Assembly: GCA_002269645.1 (NCBI GenBank)
Contig: NIVC01002143.1
Location: forward strand, 1 to 40,726
Length of the DNA: 40,726 bases
Direction: 5' to 3'
Origin: Macrostomum lignano
Taxonomy: Eukaryota
The notes below the pieces were generated by a model. That model ran no database searches and was not told the origin of the DNA. It was given only the letters and a program-made list of their open reading frames with translations. Numbering within the stretch: position 1 is the stretch's first letter; the number at the start of each line of letters is the position of its first letter. This document shows positions 14,084 through 40,726 of this stretch, in pieces. A program made the position numbers and the translations under genes.

Positions 14084-14985
14084 TCTGGGAGGCTGGCCCA
14101 GCAACTGAGCATCTGGGAGGCTGGCCCAGCAACTGAGCATCTGGGAGGCTGGCCCAGCAACTGAGGATTTGAGAGGCTGGCCCAGCAACTGAGGATCTGG
14201 GAGGCTGGCCCAGCAACTGAGGATTTGAGAGGCTGGCCCAGCAACTGAGGATCTGGGAGGCTGGCCCAGCAACTGAGGATTTGAGAGGCTGGCCCAGCAA
14301 CTGAGGATCTGGGAGGCTGGCCCAGCAACTGAGGATCTGGGAGGCTGGCCCAGCAACTGAGGATCTGGGAGGCTGGCCCAGCAACTGAGGATCTGGAAGG
14401 CTGGCACAGCAACTGAGGATCTGGGAGGCTGGCCCAGCAACTGAGGATCTGGGAGGCTGGCCCAGCAACTGAGGATCTGGGAGGCTGGCCCAGCAACTGA
14501 GGATTTGAGAGGCTGGCCCAGCAACTGAGGATCTGGGAGGCTGGCCCAGCAACTGAGGATCTGGGAGGCTGGCCCAGCAACTGAGGATTTGAGAGGCTGG
14601 CCCAGCAACTGAGGATCTGGGAGGCTGGCCCAGCAACTGAGGATCTGGGAGGCTGGCCCAGCAACTGAGGATCTGGGAGGCTGGCCCAGCAACTGAGGAT
14701 CTGGGAGGCTGGCACAGCAACTGAGGATCTGGGAGGCTGGCCCAGCAACTGAGGATCTGGGAGGCTGGCCCAGCAACTGAGGATCTGGGAGGCTGGCCCA
14801 GCAACTGAGGATCTGGGAGGCTGGCCCAGCAACTGAGGATCTGGGAGGCTGGCACAGCAACTGAGGATCTGGGAGGCTGGCCCAGCAACTGAGGATCTGG
14901 GAGGCTGGCCCAGCAACTGAGGATCTGGGAGGCTGGCCCAGCAACTGAGGATCTGGGAGGCTGGCCCAGCAGCTGAGGATCTGGG
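14084..14985. repeat. 28-bp minisatellite (CTGGGAGGCTGGCCCAGCAACTGAGGAT), array 1, ~32 units
   Basis: Period 28; it produces the 28-aa cyclic ORFs in all three minus frames. Confidence 0.95.
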
Positions 14986-15447
14986 TGTGGTTCTGGAGAT
15001 GGAGTTTGGGGAGGCTGCAGCATAAATGCCAGAACACGAGCTTTCAGAATCTAAGGTAACAAATTCAATGGTTTGAATTGAAAACTCAATTAAAGAAGTT
15101 CGATTTTGAAGCTTTAAAAACTAAAACAAAAGCAGACAAAATTTAAAGACGCAAAAGGCAAAGAAAAATCGAACACAAAGCCAGCTTAAAACTCTATTCT
15201 ATTATAAGACACTGAGGCTTTGAGAAGTAGCGAGCTGAGCTTGGACACACTGTTGATTATATTGTATAAAATGTGTAAATTTTCAACTGCATGGATGTGC
15301 TTGCACATGGACAGATATTTACATAACACAAGCGTTTAAAGTAGTCTTTGAGTAAAGAAAATTGGTAAGTACGGAAAATCAAGTTGCTACATATATTGCT
15401 TCCGCTTGCTCAGATTCTCATTTCATCTGCAGGGGAGCGACCGAGCG

Positions 15448-15868
15448 CTGAGGATCTGGGAGAGTGGCGGTGGCCCAGCAACTGAGGATCTGGGAGAGTG
15501 GCGGTGGCCCAGCAACTGAGGATCTGGGAGAGTGGCGGTGGCCCAGCAGCTGAGGATGTGGGAGGCTGGCCCAGCAGCTGAGGATCTGGGAGGCTGGCCC
15601 AGCAACTGAGGATCTGGGAGGCTGGCACAGCAACTGAGGATCTGGGAGGCTGGCACAGCAACTGAGGATCTGGGAGGCTGGCCCAGCAGCTGAGGATCTG
15701 GGAGGCTGGCCCAGCAACTGAGGATCTGGGAGGCTGGCCCAGCAGCTGAGGATCTGGGAGGCTGGCCCAGCAGCTGAGGATCTGGGAGGCTGGCCCAGCA
15801 ACTGAGGATCTGGGAGGCTGGCCCAGCAGCTGAGGATCTGGGAGGCTGGCCAAGCAACTGGGAATCTG
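15448..15868. repeat. 28-bp minisatellite, array 2, with 34-bp variants at the left end
   Basis: Same unit and orientation as array 1. Confidence 0.95.
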
Positions 15869-16569
15869 TGGGTGGTGGTGGCAGTGCACTTAAGGAGCCA
15901 ACTACTTTATAAAGCAACAAACAACTAGACAATTAAGACAACTCTGGTATATAAAACAAAGATTTAATATTCCCGTTTAGAACGGCTGGCCGGTCAACCA
16001 GAAAAAGTGACACAAGAGCAGGCAGAACAACAAAGAAAAAATGGCAAATCAGCATAGATAAGCACACAGTCGCAGCAATGCTGTAAGAGCAAAAACGAAG
16101 GGAAAAACACAGTTTTAAGAGTGCAGATTCCAGGCAATAAAAGTAATTAACCTGATCGACAGCGAACCCAGGACAGGTAAAACTTCACAGACCTTGGAGC
16201 AGCGCAATCCATAGATAGATAAGAGTAATTATTTGATATCCAAAAGTACACGAACGGTAGTGTTGATTTTAGATTTGAATTGACAAATTTCAATAAACAT
16301 AAACTGTCATCGGATAAATGCAAGTCAGCAGCACAATTAGGTCCGACATACAACTAATCTAATATTAATTTATTGTTAAATTTGCCAATGCACTTCGCTG
16401 GGCAAAAATTCAATAAATATTTGAACGGTAAAATTAACTCACTTGGCAAGCACGAGCTACGGAGTTTGATTATTGAATCATTTGTTTATTGATAATAACA
16501 CAATAACTGAAGAGTCGGGATACTGCAGTTGATTAGAAATGGAAATTTAATTTAACTTGCCCCGTTGGA

Positions 16570-17993: not shown

Positions 17994-25807
<7,814 letters not shown>

Positions 25808-26502
25808 CTTGTCAGAAAGTATTAAGTATTGAATTTAAATTTTAATAGCAATAGCAATAATCCCTGATAAAAGGTTTTTTAACTTAACACAATTACATCT
25901 AGCATAAATAATGTAAATCTATGCTATTAATATAGAAAATCCTAAGAATTTATAACTAGATATCTTAGCAATACAAATTAAATGTCACTATATAACCATA
26001 TATATAGAATGTTATAGCCTTGTGGTATTTAATATTCAACAGCAAATATTATAGGTCTATATATAACTTTTGGTCTTATTGGCATTACAATAAGTGCTAG
26101 AACAATAAATTTATTATAAACTCATAAATTATTAATACAAAGTTATCAATCTTTAAATACAAAATTCTTAATATTAGTCAATTAATTTTAATAAAAATTT
26201 TATACCTAATAATCTTTTTTATTAGACTTGTGTCTAATACTAGTATAGCTATTCAGTCCAAGAACTAGGTTGCTAGATGCACCTTCAGTTTCTAGCTAAT
26301 GTTGGTACCCATTTTATAATAACTGGGTAAACTAAAGCAATACAAGTTAAACACTAATAATATAGTATAGCATATTCAATATATCAAATTTCTTCTATTG
26401 CAAAAGGGTTTATTTTAAATTTGTTAATAGACCTAAAATGTAAGAATATAGATGAAATAAAATTTTTCAATAGTTAAAACAAGCTAAGCAAGTTTGTCAA
26501 TA

Positions 26503-27125
26503 GGCAGTGACTATTTGTCCAGTATTGAATGAATAACGTAACTATTATTTGTCCAGTACCAGATAAATAATAGTAAAGTTATTTGTCCAGCACAGTATAG
26601 ATATAGATATACAATAAAAACTTGTAAAATATAGGGAATACTAAAAAAGTAGCAGTTTACTTTTAGGCTAGAAAGCAGAAAAAATTTGTTATGATTAAAT
26701 AGTGCTGTTTCTCAGAAATTCTAGAAATTTTGGCAAAAAATACTTGGGCATAGGCCTAGTCTACATGTCATTGCCCAATCTAGCAGTTTTGTATAAGTTT
26801 TACCTTTATTATATTTCATTTTATACATATTGGTATGTTTTAATTTCATAGTAAATAGTAGTCATAGTATAGTCAAAATTAATAACAAGATTTGCTGCTA
26901 TATAACACAAATGCCAAAGTAAGGACTTATAGTTATTACAATAACAATTGGAATTGTTACAATAAAAAGTGGAGTCATCACTACAGATTTGAACTCAGTA
27001 CTGACTAATCATCAGGAAGACACTCTAACATTATGCTAGTTGCTAGTATACCTTGCTAGAAAAGATGTGCAGAGTGGCATATAAATTCACGCAGCTCAGC
27101 TGGTACCGGACAAATAATCACTGCC
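26503..27125. mobile_element. 623-bp non-autonomous DNA transposon with 9-bp TSD (Merlin- or MULE-like)
   Basis: TIRs GGCAGTGACTATTTGTCCAGTA / GGCAGTGATTATTTGTCCGGTA (20/22). Perfect TSD TTGTCAATA at 26494-26502 and 27126-27134. Subterminal TATTTGTCC[A/G]G repeats. Confidence 0.75.
26969..27045 (-). other. Heavily decayed tRNA-like or SINE-head relic
   Basis: Minus strand TAGCATAATG (A-box-like) ... GAGTTCAAATC (B-box-like). It aligns loosely to the SINE head at 20-90, mainly through C>T and G>A changes. Confidence 0.4.
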
Positions 27126-27930
27126 TTGTCAATAAAACAAAGTTATCTGAAGACTAAAGTTGTTCTTTTAGCATAATAAAAATGTTTATAACTTAATAAG
27201 TAAAATATTTTCAAAGACTTCAACAAGACTTTATGGGTATAAATGCATAGAAATTAAAATAGGATCAAGAAATTAGAATAGGCCTAGAATATAGGTCTTA
27301 CTAATAATACTGTACTTAGTTAGTTAATAGTAATAGGCCTACTATACCAGGGCCAAGAAAAAATCTTGATTCCAAATGCAACTACAAGCAAGATGTTTAA
27401 CCCGATTTTTTATTGCAACTGAATTGTCATACATCTAATTTTTTGAGTTATAATAATTATTAATAATAAAAATTACTCTTAATCTCTCACTAAAATGAAA
27501 TTCTAAGAAAGTGTGATATTCAGATTTGCATCTGACGGAATGAAATATTATTCAAATGGGTAATATGCATTGCATGACAAAAAGTTAATGAACTGCACTT
27601 TCTAGCATTCTGGTAATCTCAATCAAATAAAAAAAAAATTTTGTGCCCCTTGACGGCCTCGAGTAATGACTGACACTGACACTAAACTGACTTCCAAGAA
27701 TATCAACAGTTAAATCATAGCCACTTAGTGATGCACACTTAGAAAAACAAATCGTTTTGTGCGCAGAAACTTTTCTAGATTTAAAACTCGAATTTTTTAA
27801 GTTACGATTTTTTTGTTTCTATTTCAATTTAAAATTAAAATAAACATGTTTCCCTGTTTACTGATTACTTGTTGCCAGTGAAAATGCAACTCGAAAGCGA
27901 AAAAATCGATGCCAAGTAAATAGACCAAGA

Positions 27931-28111
27931 ATATTTCCATTGTTCATTTGCTTGCACTATATACATAGCATTTTATTTATGTATGCTAGGTATATAAGAC
28001 ATTTATGCTAATATATATGCTATATATATGCTAAAAAGTGCTACTATATATCTAGCATACATGAATAAAAGTGCAATATATACAGTGCAAGCAAATGAAC
28101 AATGGAAATAT
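27931..28111. mobile_element. 181-bp palindromic (hairpin) MITE-like element
   Basis: Perfect 28-bp inverted repeat ATATTTCCATTGTTCATTTGCTTGCACT (27931-27958 / 28084-28111), with imperfect pairing continuing inward for ~30 bp. TSD is ambiguous (AT or ATAT). Confidence 0.7.
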
Positions 28112-28996
28112 GCATGTGCATGTCATGTATCAGCTACAATTGCAGCATATTGTTTTAGATCATAAGGAATTTGTTTCAGGTCAATAAAACCCAAAAAATA
28201 AACGTGGTAAAAAGTAAAGATAGACGGTGCTCTATATCGAAGGATAAAACTAGATAGCTTAGAACCGAGTACGAGTACGACATATCACGTGCATTTCTGA
28301 AGCGAACTGCCGATCGGTCACTTGGTGCACAGAAAATAGCAGCCTATAGTGCAATCTACGCGTACCTTTTAATTGTCATATTTTTAATTGCTTCGTTTTT
28401 TGAGGAACGAGCAACATGTACGTGTGAACAGTAATATCTCAAAGAAGGAGATAGCTAGCCTAAAAATAAAGGGTGTTTAAATCAGCTAAAGCTGGTTGTA
28501 AGTTATACGTTCAATACAATTTAATTTTTCTAATTAACATCATGGCTAGGACTCGCTACTAGGAGACATGCATATATGCATAGCTCGAATACGCTCGTAA
28601 TATAGTACGACATCTTTTAGAATCGTAAAAAGAGGGACGAACAAAATATAGCGAAATGAAGTTTCCGATTTCAAATATTATTTTGTTTACATCTAGTGAA
28701 TTTCTGCTTTGCAGTGTAACTGCAGTGCCTGTACAAAGTGTGCATGTAAAAAATTAAATCTAAAATCAAGATTTCAGGTAAAAATCGAAAACTCTATACA
28801 GGGACAACTAAAACCCTCGGGACGCGAAACGAGCCAATTCATGGCAAAAAATCTGAGGGGCTCGCTTAAAAGTATTGTTCTATGGCTTTTTCAAGTCTTC
28901 TCTGCTATCAGGCAAATTAAAATTGCTTTAGCTGCGGCCAGCAGTGAAGCTAAGCTGAACTATATCAAGAGAAGCATTTTTTATTCACTTGATGAA

Positions 28997-31881
28997 ATGC
29001 CAAAAAAGTGCTGCGTATTTCCGTGCTCGTCAAATTACAACTCTGAAGCCGTTCGAACACGGACATTTGCGTTTCCCAGAGATCCACAGGAGCGAGAGCG
29101 ATGGAGAAAGGCGCTGCCAAATATTCTCCAGGTAAGAAACCAGATCATTTGCTGTCATTACTGCTGCATAATTCCGCTTCAATTCTGCATGCCAGTCTCG
29201 TCCAAACAACTTGAAACCCAAAATTTATTATTTTAGAGAGTGACTGACAATATGGGCGTGTGCGTAAAGCATTGGCCAAGCGATGCTCCAATGGTCAAGA
29301 AAAACTCTACCGAAAGGCCAATTAATCCTCCTTCTGTTTTTAATGGAGTTCCTAGCTCGTGTTTTGTTCAGAACCAAGGTACGTAACTTAAAGATTGCTC
29401 AACACTTAGCGTCTACTTCAAGTATATCGATTTTGCCGCTCACAATTATCTTACTTTTATTTTTACTCTTATTTTAGACCAGGACCGACAGGCCGAAAAG
29501 CGCGGTGTTCTTTCTGACGCGAGGTGCGGCGACATCGATGAGATGGACGCTTTTCAGCTGCTTGATTTTTTGCCGGCATGGGAAAGTTTTCGAGCTGAGG
29601 TGAAAAATTCGGATGTCGTATCTCGACATGCACTGAACACAGCTATTCTGAACGAAGACGTTTACTTGTTTACGTTAGATAAAGATGAGACCTGTCTGTT
29701 CGAATTTTTGTCTCACCCAACTTTCTGATTCGTGCATTCAAACTGCATACACCGATTTCGGTTCGAGACTTGTTGGGATTTCAACCGACACTCAAGCGCT
29801 GGTCGCAACTGGATGCTGTTGTCGTGCGGTGCAAAAATTCCGACGCCAATCCCCAACGTGAAGTCGAAGCGTTTGTTAGTAGAATCAGTGATGATATAGA
29901 TTCTGACTCTGATTTGGATCCGTCGCTTCAGTTTTTGATTCGACAACTTAGCCTTACATTAGTAAATCGGAACAATCGCCGCTATGACATTTCACTAGTG
30001 CGACAGTCAGCATTGCTCTACTTGATCAGTAGTTCGGCTTACTCTTACCTACGGAAGCTATTGCCATTGCCTCATCCCCGAACGCTGCAGCTGCAACTAG
30101 CAGGTACAGGAGAAGTTGGCACAGAAACCGACGCAGCCGATGTGATCCAGTCAGTTTTTGCTAGTCTATCAGGAGCTCAGCGAAACTGCGTAATATGTTT
30201 GACGAAATGTACATACAACCGTCCGTTCGATGTCGATGCCGTCACCTTCTGGGTCGAGCCGTCGACGATCCGGACCAGGTTGCTAGGACAATTTTGGCCA
30301 TAATGGTAAAGCCATTACTTGGTGGAAAACAGTTTGTAGTCCGACTATTGCCGACATACATTTTGTCTGCGGAGTTTCTGCGAAAATGCGTCAGCCAATG
30401 TATTAAAGCAATTAACAACAACGGTGGCCGTGTCGTTGCTCTCGTCAGCGACAATCACCCTAACAACCGCAAGTGTTTTGCTTTATTTAGCGCTGGAAGA
30501 GAGAAGCCATGGATTGGAACGGATGTTGCACAGGAGTCGGAATTCTTCATGCTGTTCGATTTCGTTCACATTATCAAATGCATTCGCAACAATTGGCAAA
30601 TGGAAGCGAATGGAATTCTAAGCATTCAACCTCCTGGCGCTGACAGACAGATATCCGCTAAATGGTCAGACGTGGTACGCCTGTACCAAATGGAGAAAGA
30701 CCACGTAGTCAAGTGCACATGTCTAACTCATGAGGCCTGTTATCCTACAAGCATTCAGAAAACTAAAGTCAGTCTCGCTCTCCTAGTTCTCGATGAAAGG
30801 GTTGCCGCTGCATTGAAGTGTGATGGATACTCAGACACTGCGGAATTTATCAAAACCATAGTGAGATTCTGGAAAATTGTCAATTGTAAAAATCCTGATC
30901 TACACGCACGACTACGGGATCCGGACAGGCGACCAGTCTATTCCGTTCAAGATGAAAGCATACAATTTCTTAGCGCGCTCGCGGATTCGTTTGATTCGAC
31001 ACATTGTGGAAAAGGCCGAGCTCGCCATCATTCATTGACGCCCGAGACCAAGTCAGCGCTAGTAAACTCACTGCGCGGAGCCTGTGAGATGTGTGAGGTT
31101 CTTTTGTCCGACCCACGAATCAGCTACGTTCTGCTGGCTGACTTTCACAGTGATCCACTTGAGGCTGAGTTTGGCGTGTATCGCCAAATGAGCGGCGGCA
31201 ACTACTATGTATCTGTGGAGCAAGTGCTGCTCAGTGCTCGACTCCGACGAATGAAATTATTCGCATCCCTTGAATTAGCAGACTACAAGCACGATCGGAG
31301 CAAATGTTGCAATGAACAGCTGAATGAAATTGAACTGGCGACCATTGATAATTGTGCTGCTAAATCAGAGGAGCTTTCCATTTCGGAGATGGCTTCGCTC
31401 TACTATATCGCAGGTAAGCTGGATATTAATTAAAATTTAATTCACAACGAGGTTTTACACAATCTCATAAAAACAATTCAAACCGTGCTTTATTGGAAAT
31501 TGACAGGTTATACAGCGACTAAAGAAGGCAGGCATCAAAGGAACAGATTTGATATCAGAGACGAGCATTCCAGCCAGCGAATTCACTGAAGAGTTATCTC
31601 GCGGAAAGCTTTGTCATCCTCCACAATGGCTGTTAGACTTATCCTGTCTCTGCTACAACAGTTTTATTCTGCACTCTCCTACGTGCGCAACTCGCGTGCA
31701 GAAGCTGTTTTATGTTATTAAGGACTTTTACTTTCCAACTAAGACACAGTTCAGCATGGACAGTGTGTCCCGTCGGCTAGCCAACGTTTTTTTCAAAGGA
31801 CTAGTAAGACGCTCGTCAAAACTCCCACCAATACCGACGACATCCCATGATAGAAAGCTTCGGAAGTTAGATGCTCAGTAG
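28997..31881 (+). pseudogene. THAP-domain P-element (THAP9-like) transposase, 4 exons, three apparent frameshifts
   Basis: Exons: 28997-29131, 29237-29378, 29478-31413, 31507-31881. THAP C2CH: MPKKCCVFPC...FP...W...CVKHW...PPSVF. Catalytic-type motifs FDEM, LVSDN, FDFVHIIKCIRNNW, SDPLEAEFG, YIAGY and SRGKLCHP. Lesions: -1 near 29690-29710, -1 at ~30190 (GTAATATG), and a 4-nt GGCA duplication at ~31527-31534. Confidence 0.85.
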
Positions 31882-31960
31882 GTGAAGTTCCAGCGTTTCC
31901 TTTATGTACGAGCTACTGACTGTTTGTGTCGTCTTGTCCTTGGAGTTCCGTATTTGCTTC

Positions 31961-32066
31961 TATCTTCTTGCCGTTGGAGTTTCATCTTCGCTTTCATCCT
32001 TTATCTTCTTGCCGTTGGAGTTTCATCTTCGCTTTCATCCTTTATCTTCTTGCCGTTGGAGTTTTT
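31961..32066. repeat. 41-bp tandem duplication (2.5 copies) in the 3' noncoding part of the P element
   Basis: TATCTTCTTGCCGTTGGAGTT at 31961, 32002 and 32043. Confidence 0.85.
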
Positions 32067-32641
32067 TGTTGATATGGCGGTTACTTTATTGTAAATACAT
32101 TGTAATAATATCACTGGTTCCTATTCTTTAAATTAAATACTCGACATTGCTTCGCTTTACTATTTAATCTAACCGTTAATGCCTGATAGCAGAGAAGACT
32201 TGAAAAAGCCATAGAACAATACTTTTAAGCGAGCCCCTCAGATTTTTTGCCATGAACTGGCTCGTTTCGCGTCCCGAGGGTTTTAGTTGTCCCTGACTCT
32301 ATACTTTATACATGTACGTGGCCGGTAGCATGGCATATTGTTTAACATTACACTCGCGCTAGAGCAGAGTATGCTGTGCAGGAGATCTAAATGCCTAACT
32401 ATATGTATGTACTGCCCATGCAGTGAAGTCCATGGGGAGGCCGCGGCAATTCCATGGCACCACCTCTCGGCTTGTTTACTGCATTCACACCAGAGATTTC
32501 ACCGTTCAGATGCAGTTTGAGAAATTAATTTTAGCCATTGCAGCACAAGAATTATCCCATTTGTAGGAACCTAAAGCTTAGAGCAGTCTGCAAATACCAC
32601 AAAAAATTAGCGAGAGCTTCAACAACAGCAAATCCGCAACA

Positions 32642-33436
32642 ATGCAGATGGCAGCGGCGGATACCAAAGAGAAATTCATCAGCACCGCAGGTGTCCAATC
32701 TGGACAGCGAGAGAGTTTACGCCTGCTCTCGCCATACGGCTGCATAATGAAAATAATTTTATCGCTTTGGCCTAGCGACAGGCAACTGCTGGCTGAGTCG
32801 GAGCTGCAGATGCTGCGCAAGTCAGCTGCAGAAATATCAGACGTTCACGACTTTACTAAGCTGCTATGGTTGGACCTGAATGTGAAGACTTATTATGAGT
32901 ATGTGAACCGTCACAAATCCCAAGTGAAGCAATGCTATCAGCTATTCAACGGTGTAATGGTGGGCCAAGTGAAGAAGATTCTGCTAACAAAAGGCTGCCT
33001 AACACCGGAGCTTCAGCCGGAGCTGGATCCCACGGATGAACAGATCGATCGACACGATGACAGCAAGTTCGAGTTTGTTGAGACAGTAACCTACGCGCAG
33101 CGCTGGTACCCCAGCAACCAACTGGGCCAACCAGATGAAGAGGCCTGGCAGAGAGGCCTGCAGCTGCACTACAGCCGCAACGAGCATCATCCGCAGTACT
33201 GGCAGGGCCGACCCATGACCTGGCGCTACCTGTTGGAATCTGTGTACGACATGTCCGCCATGGAGCTGGAGCGGCGATTCTTTGGCACAGTGCCGAAAGA
33301 TTGTGCTATTCAACTGCTGCAATTCCAGCCCGTGCATTTGGACAGATATTGCTGCACTGGACAGCGAGGCTTGATCTGCCGGCTGCTGGCAGTGGCTATT
33401 GAACAGGTGCAAAGTTTGCAAGAACACTTGGATTGA
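32642..33436 (+). CDS. Intronless HD-superfamily (DUF5662-like) putative phosphohydrolase, 264 aa
   Basis: Uninterrupted ORF. CAACAATG start context is identical to the RMDN1-like gene. Motif order RHKSQV ... RHDDSKF..E..Y ... W...LHYSRNEHHPQYW ... M...LLESVYD matches the H-HD-HH-D pattern I recall for DUF5662. The family assignment was not run. Confidence 0.7.
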   Translation: MQMAAADTKEKFISTAGVQSGQRESLRLLSPYGCIMKIILSLWPSDRQLLAESELQMLRKSAAEISDVHDFTKLLWLDLNVKTYYEYVNRHKSQVKQCYQLFNGVMVGQVKKILLTKGCLTPELQPELDPTDEQIDRHDDSKFEFVETVTYAQRWYPSNQLGQPDEEAWQRGLQLHYSRNEHHPQYWQGRPMTWRYLLESVYDMSAMELERRFFGTVPKDCAIQLLQFQPVHLDRYCCTGQRGLICRLLAVAIEQVQSLQEHLD

Positions 33437-33520
33437 AATAATTATTCTTTAATGGGTTTCTGGGAAAGCGCGTCTCTGAAGCTCTAGCGATGGATTGGCA
33501 AACTTATTTGTGGTTTGTAG

Positions 33521-33835
33521 CAGGGGCGGCGCCATGGATTTTATGGTGGGGGGACAAAGCCAAGAATTCTACATGTACAAAACTATAAATTTTTAGAATC
33601 AGTGCTCATTTTGGCGCCGCATGCACTCATATAGGCGCCGCAGGCACTCATTTTAGCGCCGCAGGCACTCATTTTAGCGCCGCATGCACTCATTTTAGCG
33701 CCGCATGCACTCATTTTAGCGCCGCATGCACTCATTTTAGCGCCGCATGCACTTATTTTAGCGCCGCATGCACTCATTTTAGCGCCGCATGCACTCATTT
33801 AGCGCCGCATGCACTTTTTTGGCGCCGCAGGCGCT
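33521..33835 (-). mobile_element. Truncated second copy of the minisatellite-carrying MITE family (one terminus plus ~11 units)
   Basis: CAGGGGCGGCGCCATGGATTTTATGGTGGGGGGACAAAGCCAAGAATT aligns to the reverse complement of 4685-4738, followed by the same 21-bp repeat. The other terminus was not found. Confidence 0.75.
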
Positions 33836-34306
33836 ATTAAGTACAGAATAAGAATGTGTACTATGTAAAAATTCGAAGCTTCAAATTATTATTTTTTTAA
33901 AGTTAACGAGAATTTTGTTAAACCTTTGAACAGGTAAACTTAGAATAATTGATTAGAAATTTTTACTGCAGCAAATTGGTTTTCTGTTGGGATCGGTGGA
34001 GCCAGAGCCAGAGTACAAATTTTCAGTTCAGAGAAAGTTGAGTTAAACCGAGGACTTGTCCAGTTCATGAAAATACGATCTCATTTATTTGCTTTACTAA
34101 TTTTTTCCTCAACCCAGTCAATTTTACGTATTTGTTTATAAGTCTCTATATTGCGCTGGAAAAATGTAACCCCAGTCAGATAACATTTTGTGTACACAGC
34201 ATTAACACGTGACTTTATGGACATCTGCACACTATCCAGTCACTACTTGCAGTAATATATTACTAAACTAATCGCTATTCTCATTCAGCAAGTGAAAAAA
34301 TTGCAG

Positions 34307-34808
34307 GGGCCGATTTCACAAAGAAACTACAAGTGACAAGTCGACAAATGACAAGTGACATGTGTCAACGATTTTGGTTTCATAAACATGGGTCTTTGCT
34401 CGTGTTAAAAATAACTCAATTTTATGTCTATGGTTGAGATACCATATGAAATCGATCCAGCCTTTAGACCACAGACCACAATTTTAGGATCTGAGTTTTA
34501 GACAGACTTGCTTTCAAGACGGCCTCTGCGTTCTTTTCGGGCTTGAATACACAGCTTTAGTAAAGCTACAAGTGTCACAGCGACTTGTCAAAAAACACAA
34601 GGAAGTCTTTTCTCACAGAAGCATCCAGCTTAGTGCATGTCTATGGACGAAACCCCCGAAGAAGCGCTTGTAATTTGTCAAATTTCGCTTGTCACTTGTA
34701 ACTTGTCGATTTGTCAAGTTGTAGCTTGTTTTTATGAAACGCATTATTTTGAGGAATTGTCACTTGTCACTTGTAATTTGTCCGACAAGTGCTTTATGAA
34801 ATAGGCCC
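34307..34808. mobile_element. PIF/Harbinger-type MITE, 502 bp
   Basis: TIRs GGGCCGATTTCACAAAG / GGGCCTATTTCATAAAG (15/17); 3-bp TSD CAG (34304-34306 / 34809-34811); subterminal ACAAGTGAC / GTCACTTGT repeats. Confidence 0.8.
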
Positions 34809-35342
34809 CAGCTGTTGAAACTGCAAAATTGAAAGCAAAATCTTCAGAAGCGATAAGAAGCAACTAACCTGAGCAGTTTGTCTAAATATTTTCAGAAACG
34901 AAATCTGTCGGGCTCATAAAATCTTTTTTCATACAACTTTGAAAACAATTTTTTAAATCAGTTGACTTTATTTTCATGAAAAGAAAGTCTGGGATTCATT
35001 CTTAGAAATCCTGGTCAGCAAACTATAACAAATAAATTAGAAATAAAATAAAGTGAGTGAAATTTTCTAAACAAATCTCTTTATTGTCCACAAAGCATAT
35101 ATTGAATGTAGCGAGAATAAGCCTGTCTATGAATTATTAAAATTACGGTTTTATTACGATAACAATTTTATTTAACTACGCGGAATTTTGTCCTGTCAAA
35201 ACAAGCGGAGATTGGCTACAATTGCTAGAATGGAAAAAATCGTTATTGCGGAAGCGAAGGAATAACCGGAATCTGCGCTAACGCAAACTTTTAGTCTCTT
35301 ATATAACGGTTAATGGGAACACCAGCACACCATTCGGTTCAA

Positions 35343-38300
35343 TCAGCACTTCTTCATCAGGCTGGCCGCTTCCTTTTTGGCCTGAAAATTTCCATGCAAA
35401 GCGAGGGCTGCAAGCTATGTAACACTGCAAAATGGCATTGCTGTTGCGGCATCACAATGCTTTAGGCCCCCAGCATCTGGGAGGCTGGCACAGCAACTGA
35501 GGATCTGGGAGGCAGTGGCACAGCAGCTGAGGATCTGGGAGGCTGGCCCAGCAACTGAGGATCTGGGAGGCTGGCCATTAACTGAGGATTTGCGAGGCTG
35601 GCCCAGCAACTGAGGATCTGGGAGGCTGGCCCAGCAACTGACACTCTGGGAGGCTGGCCCAGCAACTGACACTCTGGGAGGCTGGCCCAGCAACTGACAC
35701 TCTGGGAGGCTGGCCCAGCAACTGAGAATTTGGGAAGCTGGCCCAGCAACTGACACTCTGGGAGGCTGGCCCAGCAACTGACACTCTGGGAGGCTGGCCC
35801 AGCAACTGACACTCTGGGAGGCTGGCCCAGCAACTGACACTCTGGGAGGCTGACCCAGCAACTGAGAATTTGGGAAGCTGGCCCAGCAACTGACACTCTG
35901 GGAGGCTGGCCCAGCAACTGACACTCTGGGAGGCTGGCCCAGCAACTGACACTCTGGGAGGCTGGCCCAGCAACTGACACTCTGGGAGGCTGGCCCAGCA
36001 ACTGACACTCTGGGAGGCTGGCCCAGCAACTGACACTCTGGGAGGCTGGCCCAGCAACTGACACTCTGGGAGGCTGGCCCAGCAACTGAGAATTTGGGAA
36101 GCTGGCCCAGCAACTGAGGAACTGGCAAGGTGACGGTAGAAGCTGATGACCTATGAGGCTCTCAGGTTAATGCATAAATATGGACAGCTGAAAGTCAATC
36201 AACCTGAAAAATATAATACAACAGCTCACCTCTCGATCATCGTGTCCGTCAGCCTCGTGGTTGATGGTCTTCTGAAAGAACTCCTTCGCCTCCGGCAGCT
36301 TTTTAAGCTGATAATAGGCCTTGCCGATGTAGTTCAGGTTGGAGGCGTAGAAATTCGGACTGGCTGCAATGTGAAAAAGGCATTCAGTCCGTCCGCAAAA
36401 ATTACGTCGAGAATTAAGAAGGCTGCGAACACAGATCCCGAAGCTTAGAGTGCAGACCCGGCTAAATTCGGGATTAAAGTAATTAGAGTCCGAATGACGA
36501 AATTCGACCTGATCGTGACAGCTAGAAGTAGAACCCAGATCCTGACATCTAGAATTCTAGATCTCAGGTACTGACAACAGACAGCTAGATTCCTGATCCT
36601 GACAGCTAGATCCCTGATCCTGACAGCTAGATCCCTGATCCTGACAGCTAGATCCCTGATCCTGACAGCTAGATTCCTGATCCTGACAGCTAGATCCCTG
36701 ATCCTGACAGCTAGATCCCTGATCCTGACAGCTAGATCCCTGATCCTGACAGCTAGATCCCAAATACTGACAGCCAGAACCTAGATCATGACAGTCAGAT
36801 CCCTGATCCTGACAGCTAGAACACATCTTGGCAGCTAGAGCCCAGATCCTGACAGCTAGATCCCAAATACTGACAGCCAGAACCTAGATCATGACAGTCA
36901 GATCCCTGATCCTGACAGCTAGAACACATCTTGGCAGCTAGAGTCCAGATCCTTGTAGTGTCTGTCTATCGGTTAGCTCGTACTCGCACTCCTCAGTCCC
37001 ACCAGGCACCGGTCTTTGTCTAGCCGTTACAGTCATCACTGTACGGCCAATGCACGCACAAGTCCTATGCACAAGTCTGTCTGTCTGCACCCCGCACCCC
37101 CAACAAGCATAGGCCTGCCGGTTGTCTTCCCCCAAGCCGGCACGCCGACCAGCTGCGGCCACGAACTACGCCGACGCCGCTAGCCGCCAGCCGCCTGTCG
37201 ACTGAGACCGGCGACGTGACGGACCGAGCCGGCGATGAGGCCGGCGACGCGGAGTTCGCCAGCTCGGCCCCTGAAGTTGATTCGGGCCAGCCGGCGAGGG
37301 ACGTCGAATCGCCGCAGATGCGCCGCTCAGCGCGAACGCGACAGGAACCGGACCGGCTGCTGTACACTAAACCGGGAACTCCCGGATGTGACTGATTAGA
37401 GACAATCGCGTTTTGGTAGGGAAGGGGAAAACTGTAGTGTCTGTCTATCGGTTAGCTCGTACTCGCACTCCTCAGTCCCACCAGGCACCGGTCTTTGTCT
37501 AGCCGTTACAGTCATCACTGTACGGCCAATGCACGCACAAGTCCTATGCACAAGTCTGTCTGTCTGCACCCCGCACCCCCAACAAGCATAGGCCTGCCGG
37601 TTGTCTTCCCCCAAGCTGGGAAGCAGAGAGAGATAAATAAAGAAGCCCGAGGCCTGGCGCCTCTGTAAGAAGCTACGAACCAAGATCGAGCTGGCCTACG
37701 AGGCTCACACACACGCTCGTGCACAATCTTATTCTTATTCATTTGGAGCTAGACTCCACAATCCTGACAGCTAGATCCCTGATCCTGACAGTCAGATCCC
37801 AGATCCTGACAGTCAGAACCCTGATCCTGACAGCTAGATCCCTGATCCTGACAGCTAGATCCCTGATCCTGACAGCTAGATTCCTGATCCTGACAGCTAG
37901 ATCCCTGATCCTGACAGCTAGATCCCTGATCCTGACAGCTAGATTCCTGATCCTGACAGCTAGATCCCTGATCCTGACAGCTAGATCCCTGATCCTGACA
38001 GCTAGATTCCTGATCCTGACAGCTAGAACACATCTTGGCAGTTAGAGTCCAGATCCTGACAGCTAGATCCCAAATACTGACAGCCAGAACCTAGATCATG
38101 ACAGTCAGATCCCTGATCCTGACAGCTAGAACACATCTTGGCAGTTAGAGTCCAGATCCTGACAGCTAGATCCCAGATACTGACAGCCAGAACCTAGATC
38201 ATGACAGTCAGATCCCTGATCCTGACAGCTAGAACACATTTTGGCAGCTAGAGCCCAGATCCTGACAGCTAGAACACATCTTGGCAGTTAGAGTCCAGAT

Positions 38301-39813
38301 CCTGACAGCTAGATCCCAAATACTGACAGCCAGAACCTAGATCATGACAGTCAGATCCATGATCCTGACAGCTAGAACACATTTTGGCAGCTAGAGCCCA
38401 GATCCTGACAGCTAGAACACATCTTGGCAGTTAGAGTCCAGATCCTGACAGCTAGATCCCAAATACTGACAGCCAGAACCTAGATCATGACAGTCAGATC
38501 CTTGATCCTGACAGCTAGAACACATTTTGGCAGCTAGAGCCCAGATCCTGACAGCTAGATCCCAAATACTGACAGCCAGAACCTAGATCATGACAGTCAG
38601 ATCCATGATCCTGACAGCTAGAACACATTTTGGCAGCTAGAGCCCAGATCCTGACAGCTAGAACACATCTTGGCAGTTAGAGTCCAGATCCTGACAGCTA
38701 GATCCCAAATACTGACAGCCAGAACCTAGATCATGACAGTCAGATCCATGATCCTGACAGCTAGAACACATTTTGGCAGCTAGAGCCCAGATCCTGACAG
38801 CTAGATCCCAAATACTGACAGCCAGAACCTAGATCATGACAGTCAGATCCATGATCCTGACAGCTAGAACACATTTTGGCAGCTAGAGCCCAGATCCTGA
38901 CAGCTAGAACACATCTTGGCAGTTAGAGTCCAGATCCTGACAGCTAGATCCCAAATACTGACAGCCAGAACCTAGATCATGACAGTCAGATCCCTGATCC
39001 TGACAGCTAGAACACATCTTGGCAGTTAGAGTCCAGATCCTGACAGCTAGATCCCAAATACTGACAGCCAGAACCTAGATCATGACAGTCAGATCCCTGA
39101 TCCTGACAGCTAGAACACATCTTGGCAGCTGGAGCCCAGATCCTGACAGCTAGAAACCAGACAACTAGAATCCAGAATATCGGATCTCAACAAATTCGAG
39201 TCCAGATTCCGACTATTTATAATAGCCAAATGCCAACACACTACATCAGGATCCAATTACAGAAAAGGCCTCGCTAACCTTTCTCAGCGCGCAGCAGATA
39301 CTCGAGCGCCTCCTCGTAGGTTGAAGTGGGCGGCTTAGCAAAGAATGCGGCAGCCATGTTCCGCTGCAGCCAGGACAGATTGGCCACCTCGTAGCACCAG
39401 ACTCCGAGGCAGTGCAGCACAACTGCATCGTCCGGCTTCTTATCCAAGGCCTTAGTGAAATGCTCTTTAACAAGGAAAGAGTTCTCAATGCGCTTCTTAG
39501 TGCCCTCAAATCGGCCAGTCAGGTCAAGCAGGATGCCCATCCATTTGTGGCAGGACCAGTTGTCCGGCTCGGCTGCCAGGCCCTTTTTAGCCGATTCGAA
39601 GGCCTCGTAGATGAGCGCCTTGCGCTGCTCCTCGCTGTCTGGGCAGCGGTTGGCCAGGCCGCGGCATTCGCGCGCCAGGCGCCAATAGATTTCGGCGCTC
39701 TCCCGGCCGGCGGCTAGCTCAGCTTTGAGCTGGTCGCGCGCCTCCTTCTCCTTGCCAGCCGAGTGCAACTCGTCTACAGCGGTTAGGATATCTGAGCTGG
39801 TGCTCTCTGCCAT
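35343..39813 (-). CDS. RMDN1: Regulator of microtubule dynamics protein 1-like (RMDN/FAM82, TPR fold), 3 exons, predicted 235 aa
   Basis: Exons: 39279-39813, 36230-36363, 35343-35381; phases 1 and 0 are consistent, total 708 nt. Motifs EIYWRLAR, CHKWMGI, KKRIENSFLVKEHF..A...P.D, LGVWCYEVANLSWLQR..A..FFAKPPTSTYEEAL, SPNFYASNLNYIGKAY. Confidence 0.9.
35471..36123. repeat. 28-bp minisatellite, array 3 (variant ...CAACTGACACT), in RMDN1-like intron 2
   Basis: Same core unit and orientation as 14084-14985. Confidence 0.93.
36530..39170. repeat. 21-bp-based minisatellite (GATCCCTGATCCTGACAGCTA) with 103/143-bp higher-order repeats, interrupted by an LTR element
   Basis: HOR marker AGATCCCAAATAC at 36755, 36858, 38065, 38168 (variant), 38311, 38454, 38557, 38700, 38803, 38946 and 39049. 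Confidence 0.92.
36954..37760 (+). mobile_element. Internally deleted Ty3/gypsy LTR retrotransposon (partial 5' LTR, integrase tail, PPT, full 3' LTR)
   Basis: TG...CA ends; 5-bp TSD ATCCT (36949-36953 / 37761-37765). 36954-37137 is identical by eye to 37433-37616. PPT GGTAGGGAAGGGGAAAA precedes 37433. 37138-37395 encodes RHADQLRPR...RRSARTRQEPDRL, a typical gypsy integrase tail. Confidence 0.88.
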
Positions 39814-40726
39814 TGTTGCTATGCAGGGGAAAGGCGCTGTGCAGAAGGGCCAAGGTAAAGGTAATCAAATTTTGCATCAGAGAGTTTGTCATGACACCAA
39901 AATTCTGGTGTTAAAGACTTAAGCAGTAGAGATTTTCAATACTATGTGCATATTGTAGTTATGATAAAAGGGGTCAAAAGTAAGACAAGTGGTTTTTTAT
40001 TTGCAATGCAAAAGGCTTTAGTGACCTAGGGAAGTTCTTAAGTCCCTAAGGTTAGGGTTTTAAATTGCAGATTTTCAAAATATGCACATGGTATTGTTGG
40101 GATAGTAGAGACTAAAGATAAGATAAATGCAATCCCTAGCATTTTTTGCATAGAAAATGAGATCTATTAATGACTAATAGGCAAAACTACATGATATTAC
40201 TTTAATGCCAAAGTTATAAGAAATTCATTAGTTATATAGATAGGCTAAAAGAAAAAATTAGACATGGCTAGGCCTATAGATATAGATATAGAAAAAATTG
40301 GTTATAGTGGAACCCAAGTTATTATAATAGGCTCTATCTATACTATGATGGTTTCTAATAGCATTCCTACAAAAATTTGCTAGACAATAGGTATATCAAC
40401 AAAACAATATATCAACAAACATCATTTTTAAATAATCAATTACATGGCCTAATAAACTAAGATAGGCCTAGGCCTATATTAGTTAAGCACAAAAAACTGA
40501 AACTATATATAATAAAAATAAATAACAATGAGAAAATAGGGATAAGGATAGAAATAGAATGGAATAGACAAACTTATATTTTATATTGATTAGGCCTATA
40601 TATATCAAATTTGTTGATTTTTAGCCTACTTTTTTAGCATGTTTTACCATTTCCATTTGGCTAGTTTTTAGTTTAGCTATTATTATTATTTAAGACTTTA
40701 TTATAAAATAGTTTCATAAAATGATA

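What the first reader, a model, noticed from the sequence alone, without database searches (positions are those of the whole stretch)
32642..33436. Intronless HD-domain (DUF5662-like) gene in an animal genome, wedged between transposons
Seen: an intact 264-codon ORF with host-like codon usage and start context and no introns, whereas the neighbouring complete genes are all spliced. Its motif order is H...HDxSKF...HYxxNEHHPxYW...LxExxxD. Known (from memory): this pattern characterises HD-superfamily DUF5662, described from bacteria and viruses with unknown substrate; HD proteins are often nucleotide phosphohydrolases. Inference: a horizontally acquired, domesticated nucleotide-processing enzyme. 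It starts 346 bp after a P element and ends 85 bp before a MITE, yet shows no stop codon or obvious frameshift.
Basis: partly seen in the sequence, partly recalled or inferred. Interest (0 to 1): 0.75.

Follow-up and report, generated by a model that had tools for sequence, protein, structure and literature searches.

The report
Unannotated flatworm DUF5662 metalloenzyme gene
The ORF is a real, intact, single-exon but unannotated gene in the flatworm Macrostomum lignano; it encodes a DUF5662 protein with a conserved metal-binding site, and it is an old paralogue within a small animal-associated branch of a family also found in invertebrate viruses, not a recent bacterial import.

Summary
Window 32642-33436(+) is an intact 264-codon ORF (0 of 500 shuffles reach this length). 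It hits Pfam DUF5662 at 74 bits against a cutoff of 27 and keeps every family-invariant residue (H91, H138-D139, S141, K142, H176, H182-H183, E199, D203).

The window equals Macrostomum lignano contig NIVC01002143.1, positions 1-40726. The ORF lies between spliced host genes (PSS, RMD1), 346 bp from a P-like transposon with a perfect 8-bp target-site duplication. The public annotation calls no gene there.

- The closest relative is a 48%-identical, also intronless paralogue in the same genome (Mlig027342), followed by four eukaryote-like environmental contigs.
- Synonymous sites are saturated and there is no rate acceleration, so this is an old, constrained gene.
- No bacterial or phage sister group was found.
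- Wider relatives occur in scallop (spliced), decapods, picorna-like polyproteins, a reovirus VP1 and an endogenous nimavirus.
- The "HD superfamily" label has motif-order support only. Pfam HD models, hhalign and two Foldseek searches with pLDDT-96 models found nothing.
- The "MITE" is a minisatellite without detectable TIRs.

Best guess at function: a dinuclear metallo-phosphoesterase acting on nucleotides or RNA ends, possibly in virus-host conflict. This is untested.

The parts
32642..33436 (+). Intact single-exon ORF, 264 codons plus TGA, encoding a DUF5662 protein. No gene is called here in the public annotation (GCA_002269645.1).
   Evidence: The AF2 model has pLDDT 96.4 and pTM 0.91 and is all-helical.
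32885..33274 (+). Core DUF5662 domain (aa 82-211) matched by PF18907.
   Evidence: The core-only AF2 model has pLDDT 96.4.
32912..32914 (+). His91, the first putative metal ligand, conserved in at least 90% of the family.
33053..33070 (+). HDDSKF motif (H138, D139, S141, K142). H138 and D139 are invariant in all the alignments; S141 and K142 are invariant in the 93-sequence alignment and at least 90% conserved in the 107-sequence one.
33167..33202 (+). HYSRNEHHPQYW motif. H176, H182 and H183 are invariant; N180 and P184 are nearly invariant.
33236..33250 (+). E199...D203 (ESVYD), the last acidic ligands of the H..HD..H..HH..D signature.
32642..32884 (+). N-terminal helical extension (aa 1-81) specific to the flatworm clade. 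It is homologous to the N-termini of Mlig027342, P0003 and P0151 ('FIAT/FLAT...ImrIvl..WP').
33275..33433 (+). C-terminal helical module containing the LxR[Y/F] motif (LDRY, R235). It sits at the same spacing in the flatworm-clade members, the scallop, the majanivirus and the picorna-like homologues. In the shrimp and crayfish proteins the motif lies further out, and it was not found in the reovirus proteins.
32296..32641 (+). 346-bp upstream spacer (putative promoter and 5'UTR) between the transposon and the ATG. Its first 8 bp are the right-hand copy of the TSD.
28799..32295 (+). P-like DNA transposon, 3,497 bp, with 116-nt TIRs (28799-28914 and 32180-32295, 99%) and an 8-bp TSD ACTCTATA (28791-28798 and 32296-32303). 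Its transposase lies in at least 3 ORF pieces. It is a separate insertion and not part of the gene.
33605..33829 (.). It belongs to the same repeat family as 3598-4619. No TIRs were detected.
35343..39831 (-). Spliced host gene RMD1 (BOX15_Mlig007364g1), the right-hand neighbour.
25343..25810 (-). 5' part of the host phosphatidylserine synthase gene, the left-hand neighbour. It continues to lower coordinates.

Best explanation
The ORF is a functional or very recently functional protein-coding gene of Macrostomum lignano. It is an ancient, single-exon paralogue of the annotated gene Mlig027342, and it was missed by the transcript-based annotation.

It encodes a 264-aa all-helical DUF5662 protein. 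The invariant residues H91, H138-D139, H176, H182-H183, (E199) and D203 most likely bind a dinuclear metal centre. The protein most likely acts as a phosphoesterase on a nucleotide, an oligonucleotide or an RNA end.

It belongs to a small eukaryote-associated clade with its own N-terminal extension. That clade is part of a wider branch shared by invertebrate genomes and invertebrate viruses.

What is shown: the ORF, family membership, residue conservation, long-term constraint, the genomic setting and the paralogy. What is inferred: metal binding, phosphoesterase chemistry, substrate class and current expression.

The neighbouring P-like transposon and minisatellite are incidental later insertions in a repeat-rich intergenic region.
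For: Identity and integrity:
- ORF; 74 bits against 27.
- it keeps 14 of 14 positions conserved at 90% or more, and deviates at only 4 of 33 positions conserved at 70% or more, against 8-10 of 33 for the other four clade members compared, including 9 for the annotated paralogue.
- Tajima relative-rate tests against the paralogue give p=0.18-0.88.

Constraint and age: pN is 0.38-0.47 against saturated pS of 0.75-0.85 within the clade.

Foldability: AF2 pLDDT 96.4 and pTM 0.91.

Host setting: the window is 100% identical to M. lignano contig NIVC01002143.1 and the ORF lies between RMD1 and PSS. The P-like element has its own intact TSD, so the ORF lies outside it. No LTRs or TIRs bracket the ORF.

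Paralogy: Mlig027342 is 48% identical over the full length and is also single-exon, lying between Btk-like kinase and Rab5-binding/FYVE genes.

Clade: NJ bootstrap support is 166/200.

Metal site: H, D, H, HH and D are invariant in 93-107 diverse members, in the same order as the H..HD..H..HH..D motif of dinuclear HD phosphodiesterases (PMC8177086).

Substrate class:
- Fusions to DHH/DHHA1 phosphoesterase (P0084) and P-loop kinase-like domains (P0132), and to the HAD_SAK_2 RNA-repair phosphatase (P0108).
- Tight bacterial operons with a UDG-family gene (15 loci) and with ruvB (3 loci).
- Insertion between the 3C protease and the RdRp in picorna-like polyproteins.
- A C-terminal position in a reovirus VP1, and presence in an endogenous nimavirus.
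Against: - No gene model exists here in an annotation built from RNA-seq. That pipeline also dropped transcripts below 0.5 RPKM and transcripts overlapping repeats, so the absence is ambiguous.
- No expression data could be examined.
- A P-like element sits 338-346 bp upstream and could have disturbed the promoter recently.
- No orthologue from another Macrostomum species was available, so recent constraint on this copy is untested.
- The chemistry is inferred only from residue pattern and guilt by association. No profile or structural link to any characterised enzyme was found. An oxygenase or a non-catalytic metal-binding role is not excluded.
Confidence: 0.6

Rival explanations
1. One reading: the gene was acquired by this animal lineage through horizontal transfer from a bacterium, phage or large DNA virus and was then domesticated.
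For: - The family is numerous in bacteria and on IMG/VR phage contigs.
- All known members of the flatworm clade are intronless.
- The animal distribution is patchy: flatworm, scallop and decapods.
- Homologues exist in invertebrate viruses.
Against: - The nearest relative is a same-genome paralogue at 48% identity with saturated synonymous divergence.
- No bacterial or viral sequence falls inside or next to the clade. Clade-pattern scans of GTDB genomes, IMG/VR and metagenomes were empty, and about 100 motif-matched ORFs were core-only hits of 59 bits or less.
- The clade shares a C-terminal LxR[Y/F] module with the animal and animal-virus forms, and labelled bacterial copies lack it at that spacing.
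- The scallop homologue has introns inside the domain.
- An ancient transfer at the base of the animal/virus branch remains possible but is not resolved. Support for that grouping is 62/200.
Confidence: 0.15
2. It is a silent relic: an unexpressed duplicate whose reading frame is still open only because inactivation was very recent, for example through the upstream P-like insertion.
For: - No gene is called at the ORF in the transcript-based annotation, and the protein is absent from the protein collections searched.
- The transposon insertion lies 338-346 bp upstream with near-identical TIRs and a perfect TSD, which suggests a young insertion.
- The setting is repeat-rich.
Against: - There are no stops or frameshifts, and all invariant residues are kept.
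- It has fewer deviations from the family consensus than the expressed paralogue and no rate acceleration.
- The annotation pipeline removed low-expression and repeat-overlapping transcripts, so absence is weak evidence.
Confidence: 0.2
3. It is an endogenous viral element or transposon cargo: a gene delivered by an integrated virus (picorna-like, reo-like, nimavirus-like or Polinton-like) or carried by the adjacent transposon.
For: - DUF5662 domains occur in picorna-like polyproteins, a Drosophila reovirus VP1 and an endogenous nimavirus (PMC10871703).
- A homologue on contig L055 lies beside an rve-chromodomain integrase.
- The decapod copy has a single coding exon, and the decapod domains cluster with those of the majanivirus protein.
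Against: - No other viral gene lies near the ORF. Its neighbours are host genes, a self-contained P-like element with its own TSD, and minisatellites.
- The closest relatives are stand-alone cellular-type genes, not viral proteins.
- The paralogue sits between ordinary host genes.
Confidence: 0.05
4. It is contamination or misassembly: a bacterial or viral fragment joined to flatworm DNA.
For: The family is mostly prokaryotic. One close relative is deposited as a bacterial MAG protein.
Against: - The ORF sits in the interior of a 124.8-kb PacBio-based contig between spliced metazoan genes, with flatworm repeats on both sides.
- Its GC3 is within the host range.
- The 'bacterial' relative is a lone 1,160-bp contig with (TA)n and (GA)n microsatellites and no bacterial genes, and is probably mis-binned.
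Confidence: 0.01

Closest known systems
Pfam DUF5662 (PF18907), uncharacterised family
   Same: The score is well above the gathering threshold. It has all the invariant residues (H, HDxSK, H, NxHHP, E, D) and a compact all-alpha core of about 130-150 aa.
   Different: It has an extra 80-aa N-terminal helical extension and a C-terminal LxR[Y/F] module that labelled bacterial members lack at that spacing. It is encoded in an animal genome.
Macrostomum lignano Mlig027342 (PAA66005.1, PAA69304.1, PAA87112.1), 'hypothetical protein'
   Same: Same species, same architecture over the full length, also a single exon, and the same Pfam family.
   Different: Only 45-48% identical, with saturated synonymous divergence. 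It lies at a different locus with no nucleotide similarity. The window copy has no called gene and a shorter N- and C-terminus.
Dinuclear HD-domain phosphodiesterases (HD-GYP, PgpH, YqeK-type)
   Same: The order of conserved ligands, H..HD..H..HH..D, is the one said to diagnose di- or trinuclear HD phosphodiesterases (PMC8177086). The protein is all-alpha, and the domain fusions and neighbourhoods are nucleotide-related.
   Different: There is no profile similarity to HD Pfam models, no hhalign similarity to YfbR, and no Foldseek match to any HD structure despite pLDDT-96 models. H176 and HH182-183 are only 6 residues apart, whereas in the HD-GYP structures as I recall them the corresponding ligands lie on separate helices about 25 residues apart.
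Accessory phosphoesterase domains embedded in animal RNA-virus proteins (2H phosphodiesterase of rotavirus VP3 and coronavirus NS2; Macro, NADAR and KptA in polyproteins)
   Same: DUF5662 homologues occupy comparable positions: inside picorna-like replicase polyproteins and at the C-terminus of a roughly 900-aa reovirus protein. PMC9503650 documents Macro, NADAR, 2H and KptA domains embedded in animal RNA-virus polyproteins.
   Different: The fold and motifs are unrelated, and no activity is known. The analogy with rotavirus VP3 rests on my own knowledge. The window gene is cellular, not viral.

Membership tests
Pfam DUF5662 (PF18907) | Profile-HMM score above the curated gathering threshold | tested here: met
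   74 bits against a cutoff of 27, E=1.3e-20, aa 82-211. All 49 aligned relatives also hit only this family.
Pfam DUF5662 (PF18907) | Family-invariant residues H..HDxSK..H..NxHHP..E..D present | tested here: met
   H138, D139, H176, H182, H183 and D203 are invariant, and H91, S141, K142, E147, Y151, N180 and E199 are at least 90% conserved, across 93-107 members. The window protein has all of them.
HD-domain metal-dependent phosphohydrolase superfamily | Metal-ligand motif H..HD..D (extended to H..HD..H..HH..D in dinuclear phosphodiesterases) | tested here: met
   The residue order matches (motif definition from PMC8177086). The spacing between the third His and the HH pair is atypically short.
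HD-domain metal-dependent phosphohydrolase superfamily | Detectable sequence-profile relationship to HD families | tested here: not met
   No HD-clan Pfam model was hit at E<=10 by the window protein or at E<=5 by 49 relatives. hhalign of the family profile against E. coli YfbR gave probability 0.3%. A profile search against PDB sequences found nothing. The test is limited because only one HD template was used.
HD-domain metal-dependent phosphohydrolase superfamily | HD fold shared with solved structures | tested here: not met
   Foldseek against PDB with the full-length model (pLDDT 96.4) and the core-only model (pLDDT 96.4) gave best E-values of 1.7 and 2.5. The only HD/PDEase-clan entry listed is a PDE5/6 chain at rank 24 with E=4.6 in the full-length search; the core search listed none. 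Foldseek is less sensitive for all-alpha folds, so a very derived HD fold is not excluded.
HD-domain metal-dependent phosphohydrolase superfamily | Metal-dependent phosphoester hydrolysis | not testable with these tools
   Needs biochemistry.
Horizontally transferred gene in an animal | Physically linked to bona fide host genes (not contamination) | tested here: met
   It is in the interior of a 124.8-kb M. lignano contig between spliced RMD1 and PSS.
Horizontally transferred gene in an animal | Phylogenetically nested in, or sister to, a donor (bacterial or viral) clade | tested here: not met
   The nearest relatives are a same-genome paralogue and eukaryote-like contigs. NJ bootstrap support for the clade is 166/200. 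Its next grouping is with animal and animal-virus sequences (62/200) and includes no sequence from a labelled bacterial genome. Clade-specific scans of prokaryotic genomes, IMG/VR and metagenomes were empty. The deep branches are poorly resolved.
Horizontally transferred gene in an animal | Patchy distribution incompatible with vertical descent | tested here: inconclusive
   Named animal hits are limited to a flatworm, a scallop, a shrimp and a crayfish. Most hits are unlabelled, and animal genomes could not be searched systematically.
Endogenous viral element | Closest relatives viral, and/or adjacent viral hallmark genes | tested here: not met
   The closest relatives are cellular-type stand-alone genes. 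The neighbours are host genes, a P-like transposon and minisatellites.
P-element-like DNA transposon (flanking feature) | TIRs, 8-bp TSD, THAP-domain transposase with RNaseH-like and GTP-binding insertion domains | tested here: met
   116-nt TIRs at 99%, TSD ACTCTATA, and THAP (weak), Tnp_P_element, TNP-like_RNaseH_N and TNP-like_GBD hits.
MITE (flanking feature) | Short element bounded by TIRs and a TSD | tested here: not met
   No inverted repeat of 10 bp or more flanks 33437-34100. The feature is a 21-bp tandem array with a related array at 3598-4619.

The most novel reading that the evidence does not exclude
DUF5662 may be an unrecognised, structurally novel class of dinuclear metallo-phosphoesterase that invertebrates and their viruses both deploy. 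The viruses include picorna-like +ssRNA viruses, a reovirus, endogenous nimaviruses and possibly integrase-bearing DNA elements. The substrate would be an RNA end or a nucleotide immune messenger (2',3'-cyclic phosphate, 2'-5' oligoadenylate or cyclic dinucleotide), analogous to the 2H phosphodiesterases of rotavirus and coronavirus or to poxins. On this reading the two M. lignano paralogues are host-side regulators or captured viral antagonists. The conserved linkage with Death-domain genes on two marine contigs would fit an innate-immunity role.
Probability: 0.2. Interest if true: 0.8.

Novelty: new member of a known kind. Interest (0 to 1): 0.45.

Why it matters
For the genome, this is a conserved protein-coding gene missing from the reference annotation of a flatworm model organism. 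It shows how a transcript-only, repeat-filtered annotation can lose real genes.

For HGT screening, it is a cautionary case. A gene can belong to a "bacterial/phage DUF", lack introns and be flanked by transposons, and still be an old resident paralogue. One of its closest database relatives carries what is probably a false bacterial label.

For biology, the family is completely uncharacterised. I found no paper mentioning it and no structural neighbour in PDB. Yet it has an invariant seven-residue metal site and recurs in at least three unrelated groups of invertebrate viruses and in host genomes. M. lignano has RNAi and transgenesis, so the two paralogues offer a tractable way to learn what the domain does.

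Tried and rejected
- The word-indexed homology search with the single protein found nothing. With a 49-sequence profile it returned only 12 proteins. The exhaustive HMMER search was what worked.
- NCBIfam and PADLOC gave no hits, and PHROGs gave only a weak hit to a family of unknown function. tblastn against GenBank phages found nothing.
- PDB sequence searches with the single protein and with the profile found nothing meaningful. The VTC4 and POLD4 matches have E>0.3 and were rejected as chance.
- Foldseek against PDB, run twice, returned only generic helical proteins at E>1, such as 14-3-3, globins and DinB. These were rejected. The best BFVD matches were two unnamed viral proteins (E=0.03 and 0.37) that could not be interpreted.
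- hhalign against YfbR showed no similarity.
- The search for related loci with the broad alignment failed because it had no conserved stretch.
- Literature searches for DUF5662, PF18907 and 'Glencorse burn' returned nothing relevant. The paper defining SAK RNA-repair proteins is not held.
- I suspected that contig L055 was a Polinton/adintovirus-like element. Pfam showed only the rve-chromodomain integrase and the Death domain, so this stays unconfirmed.
- I considered retroposition from a spliced parent. There is no poly(A) tract, and the whole clade, including the paralogue, is intronless, so nothing supports it.
- I considered whether the ORF is cargo of the P-like element. This was rejected because the element's TSD closes it off 346 bp upstream.
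Full report
**1. Observation.**

The ORF is there exactly as described. Window 32642-33436 on the + strand starts with ATG, runs 264 codons and ends in TGA. In 500 shuffles of the window the longest ATG-initiated ORF had a median of 130 aa and a maximum of 252 aa, and none reached 264. From the ORF's own base composition, the chance of 264 stop-free codons is about 4e-6.

The translated protein hits Pfam DUF5662 (PF18907) with E=1.3e-20 and 74 bits, against a gathering threshold of 27, over residues 82-211. It hits no other Pfam family even at E<=10.

**2. Where the window comes from.**

A neighbouring ORF at 39274-39810(-) is 99% identical to Macrostomum lignano RMD1. Fetching that gene's contig showed that window 25343-40726 is 100% identical over 15,384 bp to GCA_002269645.1 contig NIVC01002143.1. 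The coordinates coincide, so the window is positions 1-40726 of that 124.8-kb contig.

The ORF lies in a 9.5-kb intergenic stretch between two spliced host genes on the opposite strand: phosphatidylserine synthase (5' end at about 25810) and RMD1 (35343-39831). Contamination or a chimeric join is therefore very unlikely.

No gene is called at the ORF in the public annotation, and the exact protein is not on record in the protein collection. That annotation is purely transcript-based. It discarded novel transcripts below 0.5 RPKM and transcripts overlapping repeat annotations (PMC5730564). The missing model is therefore only weak evidence against expression. The same paper gives about 4.9 introns per gene, so a single-exon gene is atypical for this genome.

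**3. Flanks.**

The upstream element (28799-32295) is a self-contained P-like transposon. It has 116-nt terminal inverted repeats that are 99% complementary, a perfect 8-bp target-site duplication ACTCTATA, and ORF pieces with THAP, P-transposase HTH, RNaseH-like and GTP-binding insertion domains. Because the duplication closes the element, the ORF 346 bp downstream is not its cargo.

The downstream "MITE" is a 21-bp minisatellite (33605-33829). A related array lies at 3598-4619. I found no terminal inverted repeats around it. No LTR-like or long inverted repeats bracket the ORF.

**4. Relatives.**

An exhaustive HMMER search of 1.84 billion cluster representatives gave 148 hits. Only four are full-length relatives at 39-48% identity.

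- The best hit, P0001, is M. lignano Mlig027342, which has three near-identical copies, as expected for this partly duplicated genome. Its gene is also a single exon (915 bp for 304 codons) and lies between a Btk-like kinase gene and a Rab5-binding/FYVE gene.
- P0002 is deposited as a "Kangiellaceae bacterium" MAG protein. It sits alone on a 1,160-bp contig with (TA)n and (GA)n microsatellites upstream and no bacterial neighbours.
- P0003 lies on contigs of about 1 kb bounded by (CA)n repeats, with a TATAAAAG box upstream.
- P0004 is on a 954-bp contig.

All four are single-exon genes. Together with a fragment, P0022, these six sequences form a clade with 166/200 NJ bootstrap support. They share an 80-residue N-terminal extension.

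Clade-specific pattern scans of 185,579 prokaryotic species genomes, IMG/VR and JGI metagenomes found no further member. About 100 metagenomic or viral ORFs carrying the NEHHP[E/Q][Y/H]W motif are only core-domain relatives of 59 bits or less.

**5. Age and constraint.**

Within the clade, synonymous differences are saturated (pS 0.75-0.85) while pN is 0.38-0.47. The window gene is as far from its genomic paralogue as it is from the environmental relatives, so the duplication or acquisition is old.

The window protein retains 14 of 14 positions conserved at 90% or more in a 49-sequence family alignment. It deviates at only 4 of 33 positions conserved at 70% or more. The other four clade members compared deviate at 8-10 of 33, including 9 for the annotated paralogue. 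Tajima relative-rate tests against the paralogue with three outgroups are non-significant (p=0.18-0.88).

There is thus no sign of pseudogene-like decay. A very recent silencing, for example by the P-like insertion, cannot be excluded.

**6. The wider family.**

Named or classifiable hits outside the clade include the following.

- A scallop gene with two tandem domains and four coding exons, with one intron inside the first domain.
- Shrimp and crayfish genes with two domains; the shrimp coding sequence is a single exon.
- A two-domain protein of Metapenaeus joyneri majanivirus. Majaniviruses are endogenous nimaviruses recovered from crustacean genome data (PMC10871703).
- VP1 of Drosophila Glencorse burn reovirus, with the domain at the C-terminus.
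- Three picorna-like genomes of about 8 kb. For two of them Pfam shows the polyprotein order helicase, 3C protease, DUF5662, RdRp, capsid.

With weak support (62/200), the flatworm clade groups with this set of about 80 animal, animal-virus and unlabelled sequences. None of them was taken from a labelled bacterial genome. The flatworm clade also shares with the scallop, majanivirus and picorna-like proteins a C-terminal LxR[Y/F] motif 45-50 residues after HHP. In the shrimp and crayfish proteins the motif lies further out, it was not found in the reovirus proteins, and labelled bacterial copies lack it at that spacing.

Bona fide bacterial members exist on long contigs and chromosomes, including Runella, Emticicia, Bacilli, Clostridia and Alphaproteobacteria. 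Others lie on phage contigs.

The overall picture is a mainly prokaryotic and phage family with a eukaryote-plus-eukaryotic-virus branch. Horizontal movement somewhere in that history is plausible, but this particular gene is not a recent import, and the data here do not identify a donor.

**7. Is it an HD-domain protein?**

Across 93-107 diverse members, H138, D139, H176, H182, H183 and D203 are invariant. H91, S141, K142, E147, Y151, N180 and E199 are at least 90% conserved. The order H..HD..H..HH..D is the one a review gives for di- or trinuclear HD phosphodiesterases and HD-GYPs (PMC8177086).

Every relationship test I could run was negative.

- No HD-clan Pfam model is hit by the window protein or by any of 49 relatives.
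- hhalign of the family profile against E. coli YfbR gives probability 0.3%.
- Profile and single-sequence searches of PDB sequences find nothing.
- Foldseek against PDB gives best E-values of 1.7 and 2.5, using both the full-length AF2 model (pLDDT 96.4, pTM 0.91) and a core-only model (pLDDT 96.4). The only HD/PDEase-clan entry in either list is a PDE5/6 chain at rank 24 with E=4.6.

I therefore treat "HD superfamily" as unproven. It may be a very derived HD fold or an independent helical metal-binding fold.

**8. Likely function.**

Function is inferred, not shown. The invariant His/Asp/Glu cluster argues for a metal centre, probably dinuclear. The associations point to nucleotide or nucleic-acid phosphoester chemistry.

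- Fusions occur with a DHH/DHHA1 phosphoesterase (P0084) and with P-loop kinase-like domains (P0132).
- A fusion occurs with HAD_SAK_2, the phosphatase domain of "Swiss Army Knife" RNA-repair proteins (P0108).
- Fifteen Bacilli/Mycoplasmatota loci have the tight arrangement thioredoxin-like, DUF5662, UDG-family gene. Three alphaproteobacterial loci have ruvB, DUF5662, ybgC.
- The domain is embedded in RNA-virus replicase polyproteins.
- Two divergent marine contigs place DUF5662 near homologous Death-domain genes (E=4e-14). On one contig the Death-domain gene is directly adjacent; on the other it lies about 6 kb away on the opposite strand. One contig also carries tandem ankyrin-repeat genes and the other an rve-chromodomain integrase.

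My working model is a dinuclear metallo-phosphoesterase acting on RNA ends, oligonucleotides or nucleotide messengers, possibly used on both sides of virus-host conflicts. I give about 0.45 to the general chemistry and about 0.2 to the conflict role.

**9. Verdict.**

The thing itself is a new, unannotated member of a known but uncharacterised family. It is an ancient paralogue, not a fresh horizontal acquisition. Interest is moderate for the locus. It is higher for the family-level pattern that turned up along the way: a confident fold with no PDB neighbour and recurrent capture by unrelated invertebrate viruses.

Noticed in passing
P0033, P0049, P0121 (hits; contigs of about 8.0-8.5 kb): These are complete picorna-like virus genomes. 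For P0033 and P0121 Pfam shows the single-polyprotein order RNA helicase, 3C protease, DUF5662, RdRp, capsid. P0049 shows the same 3C-like motif just upstream of the domain. I found no literature on a DUF5662 or HD-like domain in Picornavirales.
   Followed up: partly
P0079 (WPV74299.1, VP1 of Drosophila Glencorse burn reovirus) and P0134: These roughly 900-aa proteins carry a C-terminal DUF5662 domain. P0079 is from a reovirus; P0134 is unlabelled and groups with it in the NJ tree. The layout recalls the C-terminal 2H phosphodiesterase of rotavirus VP3, which is an analogy from my own knowledge only.
   Followed up: partly
P0072 (Metapenaeus joyneri majanivirus), P0009 (Palaemon carinicauda, L051 6001-8001), P0015/P0189 (Cherax quadricarinatus): Two-domain DUF5662 proteins are shared by an endogenous nimavirus and decapod genomes. 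The shrimp coding sequence is a single exon on a 128-Mb chromosome. This may be endogenous viral DNA or host-virus exchange.
   Followed up: partly
L003 (GCA_036350755.1 contig JAZBNS010001755.1, 1,160 bp): A protein deposited as 'MAG: DUF5662 family protein [Kangiellaceae bacterium]' lies alone on a short contig with (TA)n and (GA)n microsatellites. It is 46% identical to the flatworm gene and includes the clade-specific N-terminus. It is probably a eukaryotic contig mis-binned into a bacterial MAG.
   Followed up: partly
L053 10001-10684 and 16971-17513; L055 3211-3864 and 4150-4836: On two divergent marine metagenome contigs a DUF5662 gene lies near homologous Death-domain genes (26% identity, E=4e-14). 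On L055 the Death-domain gene is directly downstream; on L053 it is about 6 kb away on the opposite strand. L053 also has three tandem ankyrin-repeat genes, and L055 has an rve-chromodomain integrase and tightly packed same-strand ORFs. L055 may be a virus-like or mobile element.
   Followed up: partly
L007-L049 (bacterial loci, e.g. L014 5437-6629, L012 351-1786): Bacterial synteny is conserved in two lineages. Fifteen Bacilli/Mycoplasmatota loci have thioredoxin-like, DUF5662 and UDG-superfamily genes that overlap or lie 4-8 bp apart. Three alphaproteobacterial loci have ruvB, DUF5662 (4-bp overlap) and a ybgC-like thioesterase.
   Followed up: partly
P0084, P0132, P0108, P0037: Domain fusions of DUF5662 occur with DHH/DHHA1 phosphoesterase, with two P-loop NTPase or kinase-like domains, and with HAD_SAK_2 (RNA-repair phosphatase). 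P0037 has a tandem duplication of the domain.
   Followed up: partly
window 28799-32295: This P-like transposon has unusually long 116-nt TIRs (99%) and a perfect 8-bp TSD. Its transposase is split over at least three ORFs (28709-29236, 29770-30303, 30195-31433), by introns or by frameshifts. The public annotation calls only the last piece as a gene.
   Followed up: partly
window 3598-4619, 14084-14985, 15441-15880, 24001-24825, 25087-25556, 35463-36246, 36508-39155: The window is dense with 21-, 28- and 42-bp minisatellite arrays, several of them inside or next to genes. The RMD1 span alone holds about 3 kb of arrays. Many of the long 'ORFs' in the window are just open frames through these arrays.
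   Followed up: no
window 32999-33427 (-): A 142-aa antisense ORF lies fully inside the DUF5662 ORF. It is most likely a shadow ORF of the GC3-rich coding strand.
   Followed up: no
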